The position numbers and the translations under genes are program-made. A DNA stretch of 63,902 bases, filler included, from Lenisia limosa (lineage: Eukaryota > Protista > Breviatea): the NCBI GenBank assembly GCA_001655205.1. It is 6 parts of 6 records of this genome, joined end to end, with 100 filler letters (N's around TTAATTAATTAA, not from the genome) between each part and the next. Parts side by side here need not be neighbours in the genome. Positions count along the whole stretch, not along the records: positions 36,270 to 56,111 come from LPNZ01009517.1; 5 more parts are not named here. One strand, 5' to 3'. Of this stretch, positions 36,270 through 55,712 are shown piece by piece. Positions within the stretch are counted from its first letter, which is position 1. Each line of letters opens with the position of its first letter. The notes beneath the pieces were generated by a model. It was not told where the DNA came from, made no database searches, and worked only from the letters and a program-made list of their open reading frames with translations.

Positions 36270-37241
36270 ACATTTCTTGGTAGCTCTCTACTCCCCACTA
36301 ACCATCATTTTATTCTTTCCCTCTCTCCCTTTCTCTCTCTCTCTCTCAACAGCGGCGACAGGCTTCTTCTTGTCCACAGCTTCAGCTCTCGTGGTTAGGG
36401 GTGCCATTGTATTTTTTTATAAAAATAGTTGAGAATGGCTGTTCTCGTTTTTACATTTTCCACAATAAACAGCAGATTATTATTATTTACATCCAATATA
36501 ATAATTATATAGTCCCCATTCACATAGTGTCTCATTTGCTGTGCTCTTTTCTTTTCAAGTATTCCTCTTTATGCCAATAGCTAAAGAACATTTATTTGAT
36601 TGCGTCCTTCCAATATTCATTTATATTCAAAGAAAACTGGACCCCAAAACCCTTATAAGGGTCGAATCTGATTTTTAAAATCACGTAAGTAGGCTTGAGA
36701 TAAATCCTAACATTTTGACTCAAGTTATCAAATTCTCGTTTGATTGGGTCAAATACTTTTTGCAATAACAAGAATTATTCATTTACTCTTGTAAAAGTAG
36801 CAAAAAGATATGGTCACCGCCACAATCTATCGGCTGCTAGTAGAAGCTTCCCAATTATGAGTTTGAGCANNNNNNNNNNNNNNNNNNNNNNNNNNNNNNN
36901 NNNNNNNNNNNNNNNNNNNNNNNNNNNNNNNNNNNNAAGCTTGTAATTGCCACTGAGGCTAACTGTACCCATTTTTAGAATTTTCATGTCAGGACTGTTT
37001 ATAATACAAATATCATATGATATAATAAAACTACACTGTGGAATTTTTCTGAAGGGTCTTTTTTATAACAAGTTTTCAATATTTATTATTTTGCAGGGGA
37101 AAAAAAAAAAAAAAAAGAGCGCTCACAATAAAACATTATTACAGTCTCTCTTCATATTCCCATTTTTCATTCACCTTCTAAGAATGCCTTCTCTTTTTAT
37201 TTTCCTTCAATGTCAAAAGGTGATGCTTTTTTTTTATCCAG

Positions 37242-42257
<5,016 letters not shown>

Positions 42258-47361: not shown

Positions 47362-48720
47362 CAGTGCCCGAAATAATCATTGGCAAACAGATTTTTAACT
47401 AATTTTCCGCAGCTTTGACCATTTTCGATCAAAAAGTAACCATTTTGTACAAAAAAAGTTTGAAAATAAGGGTTTTCGACAATAAATAGGGTGACCTTTC
47501 GTAAAAGTACAAATTCATGTTTTTTTGGTCAAATTTTCGCGAATTCTAACTGCACTTTTTGGTTAACAATTTTTTTCAGAAACAACTTCACGAACATCCA
47601 TATCATTTTTGAGTTAAAAGTTTATTTTATAGATATTTGTCATTATTTCACATTTTCACCTAAATATGAGGAAATATTCCTCCATAAGTCACCACACTGT
47701 TAAGGGAGAAATCTGGGGTTTGTGCCGCGCTGGCTTGCATCCTGCCCAAATTTGGAGAAATATAAGAAATACCGACCACGAAGTTTCACAGCGAAATGTT
47801 TATCGTTGGGTTGGCCAATTTAGAAGTGATAACACTATGTTATGCTCGAAGCCCTCAGGGCGTCGGCCCTCTACAACTAAAGAGCAAGATGATCGAATTG
47901 TAGAGAAGGTCACCGTTGAGCCTCTTAAGCCTGTCACCCAGCACCAGAAGGAACTTGAAGCCGAAGGAATTATTGTCTCTGAGAATATTATGCGTGAACG
48001 TCTCAAGAAGGCTGGCTATTATTGCTACAAAGCCCGTAAGAAGCCTTGGATCTTCCAAAAGAACCGTGCAATGGGCTCGCGAAAGAGTGAACTGGACCAG
48101 TGCCCAATGGAACAGAGTCATGAGGTCCGATAAATCCAAGTTTTAACTGTTTAAGCCTGATGCCAATTCCCGTGTGTGGAGGAAGAAGGGTACCTGGGAC
48201 CCAAGGCACATCATTCCGACTGTTAAGCATGGAGAAGGCCGTGTGCTTGTCTGGGGTGCTATTAGCAAAGGAGGCGTTGGCAAGTTATACCAGATTAAGG
48301 GTATCATGAATAAGGAGGTCTACCTTCGTAAAATTCTCCATCGCCAAGTCAAGCCGTCGTTTGAGGTAGGCAACCCTGATACTTGATATTGTAGATTATG
48401 TTCTGGGTTGTCATTTTCATGTCACAAATACTTCAACTTGTCTTAAAACTACTGCTATTGATTGTATTTGATACAAAATTGGATTAAAACTACCTTCCTA
48501 GTACTAAGTGACTTCCTCCAAAAATTGGGATGATTTTCAGATGTGTACCTCATATTCAACTAAAGCATGCTATCTTCCAGCAAGACAACGACTCCAAGCA
48601 CACAGCTAAGGTAAGAATAATGTTGATTATGCTTGAAAATGTTCTAGGCGTTTTTGCATAACTCCTTTAGGTGTGTAAGAAGTACTTTGATGAGGTTTCC
48701 CTTGACGAAATCATCGCGAG
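47362..48720 (+). mobile_element. Tc1-family transposon, frameshifted, apparently intron-containing, 3' truncated
   Basis: Begins TA|CAGTG at 47360-66. Has an HTH region (VSQRNVYRWV..SGRRPSTTKEQDDRI..RERLKKAGY..ARKKP), a frameshift near 48060, then WARERVNWT..SDKSKF..PTVKHGEGRVLVWGAIS..IKGIMN and FQQDNDSKHTAK|VCKKYF across a GT-AG intron at 48611-48670. No right TIR was found. Confidence 0.88.
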
Positions 48721-49538
48721 GTATAAAAGAACTTAGTTTAGATGAATATTAGTACTTCTATAGTGTGTATGAGTCCAAGTCTCACCTAGCATACACCTGC
48801 TACAACCATTGTATCTACATATTTGTGAATGTGTGTGTATTTGTCAATAAAAACCGCAATCAGAATGAAAATAAACCCAGTCTCGCGACGCAATGTTGGC
48901 ATTTCTCAACAAGCCACTGAACAAAACAGACACTTCAATTGATGAACGGAGCTTATCGCACCGCATACTGAAATCGGCGAAGGTGACGGCCTCAGTTGCG
49001 GCCGGTATGTGCATGGAATCATATTTTGGCACAGAGAAGTGGTTTTTCTTTTGTTTTATTTCCTGATATTTTTTGAGTTCATATTTATTCGGGGAGGAAA
49101 TTCCGACGCTGTTGTCCCTCAAACCAGAACGATTGCTACCACTACTGATGACGGTTGGCGTTTATTACCAAATCGCGGTGGGTGAGAAACACAAAAAAGA
49201 AATATTAGTATTTGTTAGATGTTGTGTTATTCTTAGAACCAAAATACTCGACCTCGCGGTTTGTTTTTTTATTGTGTGTATTTGCTCGCGTTCCTAAACA
49301 CATTGCTACCCTTGACTGGTTTAAAGCTGTTGATTGCTCCTCCATGAAACCTTTTATTAATTTCTCTCCAAGCTATTTCTGGAGTCCCCAAAAATTTCAT
49401 CAGTTGCGTTACTAGCCTCAGAGAAAATGCCACCGGGCAAGTCAAAACAGCCTATTGTCTATTTAATACGCCATCTTCCTAGACCTCCTAGTTAGACTAC
49501 TCAATTCTTACCAAGGACACAAATCTAACACAAAACCG

Positions 49539-49736
49539 TTGAAAATCAAGGAACTCAGAAATCTCCAATTTGTAAGGAAAATCCCCGGAGAAACAGAATA
49601 CGCCATGGTCGCCTATGCTGATGATACCACCCTCATCTCAGGGTCTAAAGAAGGACTAATTACAAAATTTGAAATCACTCTCAAATTTGCAGACTTTCAC
49701 AATATTGGCCCAAATCTATGTCTTGTACCCAGCTAA
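49539..49736 (+). mobile_element. Non-LTR retrotransposon reverse transcriptase fragment
   Basis: AMVAYADDTTLISGSKEGL matches the LINE RT YADD motif. The fragment is short and isolated. Confidence 0.7.
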
Positions 49737-50740: not shown

Positions 50741-53452
50741 TGGCTTTCTTTCTTTGCTCTAGATAGATTGTCTAATTTGTCGAATTTTGACTGGATTTTG
50801 AGTGGTTTTCTTCGCTGAGCTAACGAGACCTTTCCTAAGTGGAGGCCACGAGTTTAGCGGAACGATGTGAAGCAAACGAGTCGCCGTAGCAACGGAAAGG
50901 TCGAGTTAGCGGAGCCGAAGAAGACCAATCGGGCAAGTGTAAGTGGGAATTCGCTTGGAAATAAATGAATTCGCTAGGAAAACTATGTTGCTGTATTTAT
51001 CGAATATTGGAGCGTATTTAGTCTAACAAGTTTTGTTTTGGGGATGATCTTGTTTTTTCTCAAACAAAAGAAGATCTGTTGATCTCTGGAGCTGACTGGA
51101 TTGGATGGAGATCATTTTGAGATCAAATTCTCTGTTAGATATTTCTGTCAAGTATAGTGCTGTATTGTATAAGCATACATACTCTAGAAGTAACTCCTGG
51201 CTTCTTTGGAAGCTGCCACCTATCTAGAACTGAGTTTTTGTTCACCAAGTTATTCTATTTCACCTTAACTTTCATCAAGTTATCGTAGTATTAAAGAAAA
51301 TGGACGAGTTTGGTCCGGGTCTCTACGCGACTAAATTTTTTCGGCAGTTTTCGTAGAGACTCGGTGTGTTTCGGGAAAAATTTATTACAGTGACGTGAAC
51401 TTTGAGCTGAAAAANNNNNNNNNNNNNNNNNNNNNNNNNNNNNNNNNNNNNNNNNNNNNNNNNNNNNNNNNNNNNNNNNNNNNNNNNNNNNNNNNNNNNN
51501 NNNNNNNNNNNNNNNNNNNNNNNNNNNNNNNTGGGGAATACACTCTGTTGAGGCTTTTTGTGGGTTTTATTCACAATCTCTCGCTTCTCGATTGACCTGT
51601 CGGGGTTTTCCACCGCCACCTAGACCGGGAAGAAAACACCCTTTACATAAAAAAAATGCACCAATCACCCACAGTTTCCACCCGGAATGGTTTTTAGCGT
51701 CGTCAGTGATTTTGGTGGGCGCATACAATATTGGAACTGGCACAAGACAAATTATGGCAACCAAGCCTTCTATCTTGCAAAGACTTGGTCTGTTCTAAAG
51801 GTTCATGCAAGAAACCCAGGCAGCAGTATGTTGACATTTAGTCGAACGAGTAGGAAACTGGTTTATTGGCGATGTGTTCTTCGAAAACGGATCCGTTCTT
51901 AAACCGAGATTGGAATGATAAATTATGACGTGTCACAGTTCCTGCTCCGACTACCTTTCGCTATCCTTATGTTTGCTATATTTTATCAAAAGAGCAGTTA
52001 GAATAAATTTTTAGGGCAGTTAGTCTAGAGTCTGCCCTCAAAAGTTTAGCTTTTGGAGTTAAAAGGAGATTAGCTGCCTGTCTGAATCGTTAGCGTATAA
52101 ATATGAAGTTCAAAGCAATTTCAAAGCTTTGAAACGCCACAACTTGCCAAGATCAGAGCAGCAGATCTTGCTTTTAATAAATGTTGAGTTTGGATTTTGA
52201 AGGATTTATTTCTCTTTTAATGCAATGTCCCTCAAGTTTAATCCAATTTACTCAAATACCAGATTAAAACTAGTTTTGTCTGTAAAGCATTAAAGAGTTA
52301 CTATGCTTCCGCTTGCCTTCTTTTGAAGTCCCTCTCTTCCTTCTTCCCACGTCTACTGAATATATTTCACTAGGGGCAATTTTATTCTGCTTCAGGAACC
52401 TGCTATTTCGCTACCTCTCCTATCTCGGTTAAAACGCTTGCAGCACAATGACTGTATTTCTAAATTTTTAAAGAGGTAAAAAATGAAACAATTGGGTGAG
52501 TCTATTTAGTACACTTTTTGATGTAACCTTCAGAAATGTGGACCCCTAAGGCTCACCTTCCAATGAAATCACCATCTTTCCGGTCACCACTACCCGTCTC
52601 CGGACTCGCAAATCGTAAGCTCTTGGGTGTATCATTAATGTTTCTCCTTCATCTATACAGACGATGTTCGGTTTGAAGGATTTCATGTTTCCTGAATCTT
52701 CCAACTGCTGGCATTTCTCGGTCTCTGTGTTTTTGTATCGATTTGTTCTTTGTTTGAAAAGTCAAAAAGAAAAGGTGTGTGGAGTAGGCGGAGGGAAGCT
52801 GGGAAGCCAGGAAGAGGCGCTTGGGGCGGTAAAAAGGGTTGGCAATGTGCGTGGGTGCATAATAGGTCTTGATTACAAAATAATAATGTTCGTTACAGCA
52901 AAGTTATTGGTGAAAAGTATAATAACAAAGACAAATTAATCTTTAACGTTTTGAAAAGAAAAGAAAAATTCTTTAAATTCGAGGGGAAAAAATTAAGTAG
53001 AACGGGATGCGAACCCAGTCCTGAGCTGGAATGCTCACGATCGATCAATCAACTTGAGATGAACTTATCGATCATGCGATTAATTTGAGCGCCTCGTCTT
53101 CGGTTTTCTTTTAGGAAAATCCAAAAAAGCACCTTTTTCTTTGGCCCGAAGTCCGGACTGGATGTAGGAATAGTCTGACTGCGTTGACGGTTTCTACAAT
53201 ATCTATACAATAATACTATTTGAGGACCCGCATACCAAGGGAGTGGCTTATTACCAGTTAGGTGAAGGAATCTTTTTACTACTTTTATAATAGTTAAATA
53301 AAATTTGTCATTATGACAAAAATAACATATTTCAGTCTAATTATTGAATTGTGTAACATCAATAGTCAGCCAGCGCAAGTTTGTGACTTTGTTTCTGTAC
53401 CGGTAGCATATCATATATTGTAACATACTACTTGACAACTACAAAGCTCCAA

Positions 53453-55114
53453 CTAACTCAAGATCACTTCAAGGTTGACCCCTCTTCTTATTTCACCCCA
53501 GCCAATAAGCCTAAAAAAATAAAAATATAAACAAACAGTTATCCTCACCTCCAATGAGATGCAACTCTTCTTGATAGTGCAATTTTCTCTCCCTCGAGAG
53601 TACAGACTGGTTGTTTCAAGCCAATTTTAGCAAGATCTTCCTTGACAGCCAACACAGTGCCTCCGGAACAAGTCGAACCAATATTCACCATTAAATTCTC
53701 ATTCTTTGCCAATTTTTCAACCTTTTAAAAAAGTTCCAACAAACTTTGCTCTGTTTTCCACTGTCAGCTCTCACTCCCAAAAGTCGCCTTAAGAGGAAAA
53801 AGTTGATTTCAATCTAAAAACTATAAAACTAGCAAATGTTCCAAACTTCAGTAAATATGTCTGGGAGGTGACCTGGTTTTCCAAGTACTTGCCCAACTAA
53901 TTTATCAGCTCTGCAAAGACTTGGATCAATCATGGTTCCAACCCCAATCAGCCCTCCAGGAACTGCAAATTGCAAATCATTGGAGTCTGCAAAAAGAGAA
54001 ACAATTCTCGTTCTAATAGGTTTACAAAGAAGATGCCCTTCGACATTTCTTGACACAACTCCAGGCCTAATCTCTATCTCATCATTCTGTGACAGTACCC
54101 CCAAATAATAAAAATAAAAAGATACTTGCAAAATAGACCCCCCAGCTATTCCACCACAAAGTTTTTCAACATCACAACCAGGTTTGTTTACATCAAAAGA
54201 ACGGATGATAATCATTCTTGGAATCATATTAATCTGAAAGAAAAACTGAAGTGAAATCCCTTGCAGGAAAAGGAACCTTGGTTACAATTTGTTCACATAA
54301 AGAATCAATGTTGTACTTATGCTGCGCCGATATTGGTATTATAGAAGAACCCTCCGCAATTGTTCCTGAATGATCCCCAAAATATTACCTTCAATAAAAC
54401 GAATAATTTGTTGATACTGTTCAGCAGCTTGAGGTTCTTTTAATAAATCAACCAAAAATGAAAAAAAAATAAACACTTTATTTTGAAGAATAATAATATT
54501 TTTTAATCTCATAATTTCAATTGCAGCAAGATGCTCAGACGTCTGAGGTTGTGGACAAGGTTCATTTCCAGCAATAATTAAGAGAGCTGCATCCATTACT
54601 GCAGCCCCATTGAGCATTGTCGCCATAAGAATATCATGACCGGGACAATCTACAAAAGAAATGTGTCTTTTAATTTAAGATGAAAAAAACTTCATCAAGG
54701 TTGAAGGCGCGCCACATGAATGACAACATTCATCAATTGGAGCAGATGAGGATCCAGAATGATAGCATCCAGGAGGAAAGCATTTGCTACTTGTGCACAT
54801 ATAAAAAGATCTGATCAACCTTAAAAATTTTGGCATTTGCATAACCTAGTTTGATTGTAATATTTCTTACAATTTCACTCTTAAATCTAACAGTCTACAT
54901 GGTGAGAGATTAGGTCACTAACATGAACTCCTGAAACCGCTTTGACAACAGTTGATTTTCCATGAGCAACATGACCAATGGTTCCTGTTCAATAAAGTAC
55001 TAAAAAACAAACCTATATTTATTGTTGCTTGTCGACTGAATGGTAAAACAGTAAAAACTAAACAAACGAAATTACTGAATGACTGTCAGCGCGAAGAGTT
55101 TTAAAATTAATCAT
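53453..55114 (-). CDS. EIF2S3: Translation initiation factor eIF2 subunit gamma, 13 exons, complete (446 aa if all 12 introns are removed)
   Basis: [16 protein letters not shown]|RQATINIG|[11 protein letters not shown]..|[16 protein letters not shown]|C..|[22 protein letters not shown]|VD..|..PARDFTS|[20 protein letters not shown]|GVL..|..|..SRRVASHWR|LIGWGEI..ILS*. Intron lengths are 32, 28, 28, 22, 24, 24, 23, 22, 24, 33, 23 and 38 nt (321 total). 1662-321 = 1341 nt = 447 codons. Confidence 0.96.
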
Positions 55115-55712
55115 TTTGGCAGGAGTGCACGAAGTTGACCGATAAGGAGCAATGGAGCCTGCTGGCCTGCAATGAAGTAAATATGCAACCTAAAACTGTA
55201 TCAAGCTTGAACGTACCAGTGTACCTGTCTGGTGCTCTGGCTGTGCTCTGGTGCGAGTAAGCAAGAGTCTTGCAAGAGTCAAGGTGCAATGTACAAGTTG
55301 TGTAGTTGTACAGCAATGTACACCAAAATGTACAGGTTGCAGGTTGGCGGTTGGGCAGGTTAGCAGCTGGTTGGCAGAAAGAACTTGGTGAAGGACGAGG
55401 TAAAGGAACTGAGTAAGGAAAAGAAAATCAGGAGAAAAACAATCCTGGGGTTGTGTATAAAGTTAAGCCTAGGGATAACGAAAGCCAAACCTGGATATTT
55501 TTATTGGATATTATCACGGAGTACAATAGACGCGCAACATCAGTTAATGGAAGATAGTCAGTTGAGTTAAAGCATTTGAGCTAACTATGTTGCTCCGATA
55601 ACAGTGCCAACTCCCTCTTGAGTGTGAATCTATCGACTTAGTCATGGTAGGTTAATAGTCAAAAGATTATATGTGTAAATAAGACAGGTTACCAATAAAT
55701 TCACCCTTTACA

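What the first reader, a model, noticed from the sequence alone, without database searches (positions are those of the whole stretch)
54102..54819. Four tiny GT-TG introns in the essential eIF2-gamma gene: a non-AG 3' splice-site class
Seen in sequence (minus strand): 54798-54819 gttgatcagatctttttatatg (22 nt), 54453-54476 gtgtttatttttttttcatttttg (24 nt), 54225-54246 gtttttctttcagattaatatg (22 nt) and 54102-54125 gtatctttttatttttattatttg (24 nt). All start with GT, are T-rich like the eight neighbouring GT-AG introns, and end in (A/T)TG. Removing them restores the conserved eIF2-gamma motifs with no indel: AKIFK|[16 protein letters not shown]|VDLL, RDFTS|IPRM and SILQ|GVL. The first is decisive, because every nearby AG gives a stop (aag|atc..tag, aag|tag, aag|caa..tga), so the gene cannot be translated without a TG acceptor. 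The full model gives exactly 447 codons. Established knowledge: spliceosomal introns almost always end in AG, and GT-TG introns are normally rare exceptions. Inference: 4 of 12 in one housekeeping gene implies a spliceosome that routinely accepts TG, not scattered errors.
Basis: partly seen in the sequence, partly recalled or inferred. Interest (0 to 1): 0.93.

Follow-up and report, generated by a model that had tools for sequence, protein, structure and literature searches.

The report
Four real GT-TG mini-introns in eIF2-gamma
An essential translation-factor gene of a protist labelled Lenisia limosa has twelve introns of only 22-38 bases, and an independently assembled transcript shows that all twelve are cut out exactly, including four that end in TG instead of the near-universal AG.

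Summary
On the minus strand, 55114-53453 encodes eIF2-gamma in 13 exons. There are 12 introns of 22-38 nt: eight GT-AG and four GT-TG (54819-54798, 54476-54453, 54246-54225, 54125-54102).

Removing all twelve gives 446 codons plus a TAG stop. That protein is identical, 446 of 446 residues, to a TransDecoder ORF from a de novo Trinity transcript held in EukProt under Lenisia limosa (Breviatea). So the four TG-ending segments are absent from mature mRNA, at exactly the predicted junctions.

The DNA of 53400-55200 is identical in three assemblies: the window, an ENA SPAdes contig and a Logan contig. Intron 54246-54225 can only be read as GT..TG. The other three have slid alternatives, but none of these ends in AG.

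My first guess of a dicyemid was wrong; a single-gene eIF2-gamma tree places the protein outside animals and fungi.

Not shown: lariat or U2 dependence, splicing efficiency, and how common TG acceptors are genome-wide. The other three introns I could read on this contig all end in AG.

TG acceptors have precedents. They are rare alternative sites in human genes, and occur in a few small AT-rich introns and introner elements of Micromonas. I found no report of constitutive use at a third of one essential gene's introns, nor of ultra-short introns in a breviate.

The parts
53453..55114 (-). eIF2-gamma (EIF2S3/GCD11-type) gene, from the ATG at 55114 to the TAG at 53455-53453. It has 13 exons and encodes 446 aa.
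   Evidence: Model built. PDB eIF2-gamma chains match the exon at 53847-54101 at 1e-34. The model aligns without indels at the junctions to full-length homologues. It is identical to transcript-derived P0388.
55036..55067 (-). Intron 1: 32 nt, GT-AG, phase 2.
   Evidence: absent from P0388
54985..55012 (-). Intron 2: 28 nt, GT-AG, phase 1.
54895..54922 (-). Intron 3: 28 nt, GT-AG, phase 0.
54798..54819 (-). Intron 4: 22 nt, GT-TG, phase 0, at junction AKIFK|CTSSKC. The only slid alternative is GG..AT. No AG acceptor keeps the frame.
   Evidence: the junction is present in P0388
54667..54690 (-). Intron 5: 24 nt, GT-AG, phase 2.
54453..54476 (-). Intron 6: 24 nt, GT-TG, phase 0, 75% T, at junction LQNK|VDLL. 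Keeping it would split the NKxD (G4) GTP-binding motif. Slid alternatives are TG..GG and GT..GT.
   Evidence: the junction is present in P0388
54366..54388 (-). Intron 7: 23 nt, GT-AG, phase 1.
54225..54246 (-). Intron 8: 22 nt, GT-TG, phase 0, at junction RDFTS|IPRM. The boundaries are unambiguous, with no slid alternative. An internal CAG would give a 13-nt GT-AG intron plus an INM insert. That form is not seen in the transcript products.
   Evidence: the junction is present in P0388
54102..54125 (-). Intron 9: 24 nt, GT-TG, phase 0, 71% T, at junction SILQ|GVL. The slid alternative is TA..GG.
   Evidence: the junction is present in P0388
53814..53846 (-). Intron 10: 33 nt, GT-AG, phase 0.
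53722..53744 (-). Intron 11: 23 nt, GT-AG, phase 0.
53511..53548 (-). Intron 12: 38 nt, GT-AG, phase 2.

Best explanation
The four segments are genuine, constitutively removed introns with GT at the 5' end and TG at the 3' end. They sit among eight GT-AG introns of the same ultra-short, T-rich kind in the single detectable eIF2-gamma gene of a non-opisthokont protist that EukProt labels Lenisia limosa (Breviatea).

Shown: the segments are in the DNA, and they are absent from the mRNA at exactly these junctions.

Inferred: the same U2-type spliceosome that removes the neighbouring GT-AG introns also removes these. A 22-24 nt intron has no room for a pyrimidine tract plus AG read-out. I therefore propose that the 3' site is set mainly by its distance from the 5' site or branch point and by the terminal G. 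That G pairs with the first intron G at exon ligation (established knowledge from C*/P-complex structures). Under this reading the -2 position tolerates U as well as A.
For: The gene model with all 12 introns removed gives 446 aa. It is identical to P0388, EukProt EP01086_Lenisia_limosa_P016171/2, named TRINITY_DN57_c0_g1_i1.p1, ORF type complete. 'DN' marks a de novo assembly, which has no splice-motif bias.

Isoform P0272 is identical over residues 1-438, so it also lacks all four segments.

A polyA RNA run holds 0.54 of the sampled genomic 31-mers. I computed an expected 0.587 if all 12 introns are spliced and 0.717 if the four TG introns are retained.

The DNA of 53400-55200 is identical in the window, in ENA contig NODE_383 and in a Logan contig of run X1 with depth 37.6.

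Intron 54246-54225 has no alternative boundary. Keeping 54476-54453 would split the NKxD motif.

The four TG introns share the GT start and T-richness of their neighbours: 50-75% T against 31% in exons.

Only one genomic ORF cluster for this part of the gene was found in 5.8 billion proteins.
Against: I obtained no junction-spanning reads. Read laying placed no RNA contig, and its own output says this result can be false. The transcript evidence is therefore at protein level, through one public Trinity assembly.

The RNA run and the Trinity assembly may derive from the same study, and the three DNA assemblies probably share reads.

Lariat formation, U2 dependence and splicing efficiency are untested.

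The organism label rests on EukProt. The source was a metatranscriptomic enrichment culture.

The three other introns read on this contig end in AG, so TG use could be particular to this gene.
Confidence: 0.85

Rival explanations
1. Assembly or base-calling error: the true 3' ends are AG and the T at -2 is wrong in the assembly.
For: All the assemblies may derive from the same read set, and I could not inspect raw DNA reads (laid contigs only).
Against: Three assemblies made with different software agree base for base over 1801 nt. It would take four independent A-to-T errors, each at the -2 position of an intron. Contig coverage is about 36x.
Confidence: 0.02
2. This locus is a silent paralogue or pseudogene. 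The matching transcript comes from another copy with canonical introns or none.
For: Protein-level identity cannot say which locus was transcribed. The contig is rich in transposons and carries a fragmentary SRCAP-like gene.
Against: Excising exactly these 12 segments gives 446/446 identity with no frameshift or stop. The search with the 132-aa ORF found a single genomic cluster on one contig and nothing else above 67% identity. The RNA run shares 54% of the locus's exact 31-mers, close to the 59% expected for its fully spliced mRNA.
Confidence: 0.04
3. The TG-ended segments are removed by something other than the major spliceosome. Candidates are the U12-type spliceosome, a protein endonuclease-ligase pathway, or DNA-level excision as for ciliate IESs.
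For: The non-AG 3' end breaks the U2-type rule. U12-type 3' sites are known to be set by distance and to vary. Intron 54125-54102 begins GTATCTTT, a 7/8 match to the U12 5' consensus RTATCCTT as I recall it.
Against: The other three lack any U12-like 5' site, and none has a TCCTTAAC-like branch box. There are no TA-TA boundaries as in Paramecium IESs, and the segments are present in DNA contigs at full depth. They are interleaved with, and compositionally like, eight GT-AG introns in the same transcript.
Confidence: 0.06
4. The introns are real, but the TG acceptors are a peculiarity of this gene (for example recent AG-to-TG mutations that are tolerated). They are not a genome-wide class.
For: All four TG cases are in one gene. 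The three other introns on the contig are GT-AG. A possibly conspecific contig, L003, shows only conventional 95-250 nt GT..YAG introns.
Against: Four independent sites in one essential, highly conserved gene are hard to explain unless the machinery handles TG efficiently. P(4 or more of 12) is about 5e-6 at a 1% rate.
Confidence: 0.3

Closest known systems
TG alternative 3' splice sites in human U2-type introns (Szafranski et al. 2007, PMC2374985)
   Same: GT...TG introns handled by the major spliceosome, with the last base G kept.
   Different: In human they were verified in only 36 genes and act as alternative sites. Here they are the sites used in every transcript product seen, in 4 of 12 introns of one essential gene, and the introns are only 22-24 nt long.
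Small AT-rich 'BOC1' introns and IE-B/IE-D introner elements of Micromonas (Verhelst et al. 2013, PMC3879977)
   Same: Short, low-GC introns without a discernible branch motif, some with TG (or CG) acceptors validated by ESTs. One introner class has GT-TG ends. They coexist with conventional introns in the same genome.
   Different: In Micromonas only 34 BOC1 introns have such acceptors, and the host is a green alga. Here the lineage is labelled Breviatea, the share in the one gene sampled is a third, and the sequences do not look like repeats.
Ultra-short-intron lineages: Paramecium and Nyctotherus (about 25 nt, PMC5014332), Stentor (15-16 nt), myxobolid myxozoans and Dicyema (medians 22-27 nt, PMC13644364, PMC6543705)
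   Same: Intron size of 22-38 nt, reduced splice-site motifs, and no real pyrimidine tract.
   Different: Those reports describe GT...AG ends; the logos in PMC13644364 keep AG. I found no mention of a breviate among ultra-short-intron lineages.
U12-type (minor) introns with variable 3' dinucleotides
   Same: The 3' site need not be AG and is thought to be set by distance from the branch site (my own knowledge).
   Different: The defining 5' site and branch-site boxes are absent from these four introns.

Membership tests
U2-type (major) spliceosomal intron | 5' terminal GT (or GC) | tested here: met
   All 12 introns start with GT.
U2-type (major) spliceosomal intron | 3' terminal AG | tested here: not met
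   Four introns end in TG. No slid alternative ends in AG, and intron 54246-54225 is unambiguous.
U2-type (major) spliceosomal intron | Precise removal from mature mRNA | tested here: met
   The de novo transcript product P0388 equals the genomic model minus all 12 introns, 446/446.
U2-type (major) spliceosomal intron | Branch-point A and pyrimidine-rich 3' part | tested here: inconclusive
   The TG introns are 50-75% T, and the sequences printed show A residues 3-9 nt before the 3' end. No shared branch motif is visible in 12 introns.
U2-type (major) spliceosomal intron | Lariat intermediate; dependence on U2/U5/U6 | not testable with these tools
   Needs lariat sequencing or biochemistry. 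No snRNA gene was found in the 57 kb of loci scanned.
U12-type (minor) intron | 5' site RTATCCTT and branch box TCCTTAAC about 10-15 nt from the 3' end | tested here: not met
   Only intron 54125-54102 has a near match, GTATCTTT. None has the branch box. The consensus is from my own knowledge.
Human-type TG alternative acceptor | TG used as a minor alternative to a nearby in-frame AG acceptor | tested here: not met
   For 54819-54798 no AG keeps the frame. For 54246-54225 the internal CAG form (+INM) is not among the transcript products. Both isoforms use TG.
Ciliate-type IES (DNA elimination) | TA-flanked segment missing from somatic DNA | tested here: not met
   The boundaries are not TA repeats. 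The segments are present in DNA contigs at depth 37.6, against contig coverage 36.3.
eIF2-gamma (EIF2S3 / GCD11) | GTPase domain with G motifs and zinc knuckle, plus domains II and III, colinear with known eIF2-gamma | tested here: met
   PDB eIF2-gamma chains match at 1e-34. The exon ORFs carry the Pfam hits GTP_EFTU, GTP_EFTU_D2 and eIF2_C. Identity to full-length homologues is 70-72%. The alignment has no indels at the junctions.

The most novel reading that the evidence does not exclude
The organism labelled Lenisia limosa, and perhaps Breviatea generally, has a sizeable population of ultra-short introns (about 19-38 nt). In these the 3' splice site is defined by a distance ruler plus a terminal G rather than by AG. 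GT-TG introns would then make up on the order of 10-50% of the shortest class genome-wide, alongside conventional long GT-YAG introns. This would imply a lineage-specific relaxation of 3' splice-site read-out, for example in U2AF35, Prp8, Slu7 or Prp18. It would also mean that current GT-AG-only annotations of this genome are systematically broken.
Probability: 0.45. Interest if true: 0.8.

Novelty: new variant of a known kind. Interest (0 to 1): 0.66.

Why it matters
The AG at the 3' end of spliceosomal introns is one of the most invariant signals in eukaryotic gene expression. This is a natural system in which an essential gene relies on TG acceptors at four of its twelve introns, each only 22-24 nt long. 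It offers a direct handle on two questions: how the second catalytic step picks its site when there is no room for U2AF-type AG and pyrimidine-tract recognition, and how far the -2 position can drift.

There is also a practical consequence. Gene finders and spliced aligners restricted to GT-AG, GC-AG and AT-AC would mis-annotate such genes, because the two 22-nt introns cause frameshifts. Proteomes of this lineage predicted from the genome alone would be systematically damaged.

It would also add a deep-branching obazoan to the short list of lineages with introns under 30 nt.

Tried and rejected
- **RNA contigs.** Read laying on runs X2 (RNA) and X1 placed no RNA contig, so it gave no junction evidence. 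That was the only call allowed.
- **Dicyemid or myxozoan origin.** I first suspected one from the intron sizes, 36% GC and N gaps. I rejected this because the transcript product is filed under Lenisia limosa and the single-gene eIF2-gamma tree puts it outside Metazoa, Holozoa and Fungi.
- **Finding the transcript product.** The first alignment, a vertebrate homologue plus all exon pieces, was mis-aligned by MAFFT and discarded. A divergent full-length row plus four clean exon pieces worked.
- **Close relatives of the genomic exon ORF.** The search found only the window's own ORF, so no orthologous locus was available for comparison.
- **More genomic contigs of the organism.** A search with the Tc1-like transposase gave two contigs. 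One holds only transposon remains. The other, L003, carries an FG-GAP/integrin-alpha-like gene with conventional 95-250 nt GT-YAG introns. It is linked to the window's contig only by a 75%-identical transposase.
- **Walking along L003's contig.** This failed because most called genes there contain in-frame stops and cannot be passed by reference.
- **Naive ORF-joining scan for more tiny introns.** Considered and dropped, because I estimated the false positives would swamp the signal.
- **Other mechanisms.** U12-type, IES-type and translational-bypass readings were considered and rejected; see the rivals and the membership test.
- **Rfam.** No RNA gene was found in 57 kb.
- **Literature.** Nothing on breviate introns turned up. 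The original Lenisia paper is not held in the library.

Full report
**What is there.** Reading 53300-55400 on the minus strand and building the model by script gives an eIF2-gamma gene. It runs from the ATG at 55114 to the TAG at 53455-53453, with 13 exons and 12 introns of 22-38 nt. Eight introns are GT-AG. The spliced frame is 446 codons plus a stop.

The 85-aa exon at 53847-54101 matches solved eIF2-gamma chains of human, rabbit and yeast at about 1e-34. The full model aligns to full-length homologues with no indel at any of the four TG junctions. The two 24-nt segments are stop-free multiples of three, so sequence alone would allow 8-residue read-through inserts. One of these would split the NKxD GTP-binding motif. 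Only the two 22-nt segments are forced out by the frame.

**Boundary ambiguity.**
- Intron 54246-54225 has no slid alternative, so it is GT..TG without doubt.
- Intron 54819-54798 could also be written GG..AT.
- Intron 54476-54453 could also be written TG..GG or GT..GT.
- Intron 54125-54102 could also be written TA..GG.

None of these alternatives ends in AG. Since all twelve introns can be written with a 5' GT, GT-TG is the economical reading. The TG introns are 50-75% T and 12-27% GC, against 31% T and 39% GC in the exons. They tend to be the shortest (22-24 nt against 23-38 nt), and all are phase 0. With n=12 these trends are not significant (p = 0.07-0.13).

**Are they removed from the RNA?** My single read-laying run placed no contig of the polyA RNA run, and the tool itself warns that this can be a false negative. 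I therefore looked for transcript-derived proteins.

A search with the 132-aa genomic ORF found only the window's own ORF and nothing else above 67% identity. I then aligned four clean exon translations to a divergent full-length homologue (A3) and searched with that profile. A local BLAST of my model against all returned proteins gave P0272, 100% identical over residues 1-438. Its cluster contains P0388, 446 aa. The source is EukProt EP01086_Lenisia_limosa_P016171/2, named TRINITY_DN57_c0_g1_i1.p1, 'ORF type:complete'. P0388 is identical to my model over its whole length.

A Trinity 'DN' contig is a de novo assembly of RNA reads and knows nothing of splice motifs. So the mature mRNA lacks all twelve segments, the four TG-ended ones included, at the predicted junctions.

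A weaker, independent-looking line agrees. The RNA run holds 0.54 of the locus's sampled 31-mers. I computed an expected 0.587 for fully spliced mRNA and 0.717 if the four TG introns were retained.

**Is the DNA right?** The 1801 bases 53400-55200 are identical in three assemblies:
- the window, which is a scaffolded assembly with N runs;
- ENA SPAdes contig NODE_383, 26,551 bp, coverage 36;
- a Logan contig of run X1, depth 37.6.

The assemblies probably share reads. Even so, four A-to-T errors, each at the -2 position of an intron, are not credible.

**Which organism?** Intron size, 36% GC and assembly gaps first suggested Dicyema. That was wrong.
- The transcript product is filed under Lenisia limosa, a breviate.
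- The runs date from 2016 and include a polyA 'metatranscriptomic' library.
- A single-gene eIF2-gamma tree puts the protein outside Metazoa, Holozoa and Fungi, among amoebozoans and unlabelled sequences. This is low-resolution evidence, and consistent with a non-opisthokont amorphean.
- The label itself comes from EukProt, and I could not verify it independently.

**How general is it?** The rest of the 26.5-kb contig is mostly transposon remains. The only other cellular gene is a SRCAP/Swr1-like helicase-C fragment on the plus strand. By motif alignment it has three introns, all ending in AG:
- a 19-nt GT-AG intron at window 37755-37773;
- a GT-AG intron of about 4.1 kb, full of repeats;
- a 25-nt GT-AG intron.

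So tiny and very long introns coexist on one contig, and TG ends occur in 4 of the 15 introns I could read. The exact 95% interval is 8-55% for 4/15 and 10-65% for 4/12. P(4 or more of 12) is about 5e-6 at a 1% rate.

A second contig (L003, NODE_79, GC 42%, coverage 30) was reached through a 75%-identical Tc1-like transposase. It carries an FG-GAP/integrin-alpha-like gene whose introns are conventional: 95-250 nt, GT...YAG, with pyrimidine tracts. Whether that contig belongs to the same organism is not proven.

**Mechanism.**
- Shown: the segments are present in the DNA and absent from the mRNA, with exact junctions, a GT start, a TG end and T-rich interiors.
- Inferred: they are removed by the major spliceosome together with their GT-AG neighbours.
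- From established structural work on the exon-ligation spliceosome (my own knowledge): the last intron G pairs with the first intron G, and the -2 A contacts the 5' site U and the branch adenosine.
- Proposed: a 22-24 nt intron leaves a fixed, very short path from branch to 3' end. The site could then be chosen by distance and by the retained terminal G, with U tolerated at -2.

Nothing here tests that. No snRNA or splicing-factor gene was within reach; Rfam found nothing in 57 kb.

**Comparison with what is known.**
- TG acceptors are documented as rare alternative sites in 36 human genes (PMC2374985).
- In Micromonas, 34 small AT-rich 'BOC1' introns have TG or CG acceptors, and one introner class has GT-TG ends (PMC3879977).
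- Ultra-short introns are known in some ciliates, a nucleomorph, dicyemids and myxobolids, all described with AG ends (PMC13644364, PMC6543705, PMC5014332).
- In the literature I could search, nothing reports tiny introns or TG acceptors in breviates. The original Lenisia paper is not held.

I therefore rate this a new variant of a known kind. It is real and transcript-confirmed, with an unusually high local frequency in an essential gene. Its genome-wide extent is still open.

Noticed in passing
window 37520-37911 (+), continuing at L005:12008-12200 (+): A SRCAP/Swr1-like helicase-C fragment on the same contig. It has a 19-nt GT-AG intron (window 37755-37773), a GT-AG intron of about 4.1 kb full of repeats, and a 25-nt GT-AG intron. 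No SNF2 N-lobe was found in the 7 kb upstream, so it may be a gene fragment or have further long introns.
   Followed up: partly
L003:2300-9500 (-): An FG-GAP/integrin-alpha-like gene on ENA contig NODE_79 (GC 42%, coverage 30). It has conventional 95-250 nt GT...YAG introns with pyrimidine tracts. If this is the same organism, two very different intron populations coexist. The link is only a 75%-identical Tc1-like transposase.
   Followed up: partly
window 53476-53478 (-), last exon: Transcript isoform P0272 (444 aa) diverges from the genome-colinear form right after codon 438 (ggg), where the genome reads GT. It ends in DRKTHV. That fits an alternative donor, but I could not find the acceptor exon anywhere on the contig.
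   Followed up: partly
window 39129-39533 (+), 47633-48700 (+), 49467-49733 (+); L004:8225-8944 (-): The contig is dense in transposon remains: Tc1/mariner-like transposase pieces, a reverse-transcriptase-like YADD segment, and on a sister contig a pogo/DDE_1-like ORF. A 98%-identical transposase copy lies on NODE_1865.
   Followed up: partly
window 36870-36936 and six other N runs between 42931 and 51531: At 36870-36936 the ENA contig NODE_383 carries real sequence of a different length in place of the Ns, and locus L005, which covers part of that contig, contains no N at all. The window therefore comes from a different, scaffolded assembly of the same genome. The other six N runs were not compared directly.
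   Followed up: partly
L003 and L004, called genes: Most genes called on these ENA contigs contain several in-frame stop codons when translated with table 11. This looks like a property of the gene caller on eukaryotic DNA, not evidence of a variant code. The eIF2-gamma ORF ends at a normal TAG.
   Followed up: no
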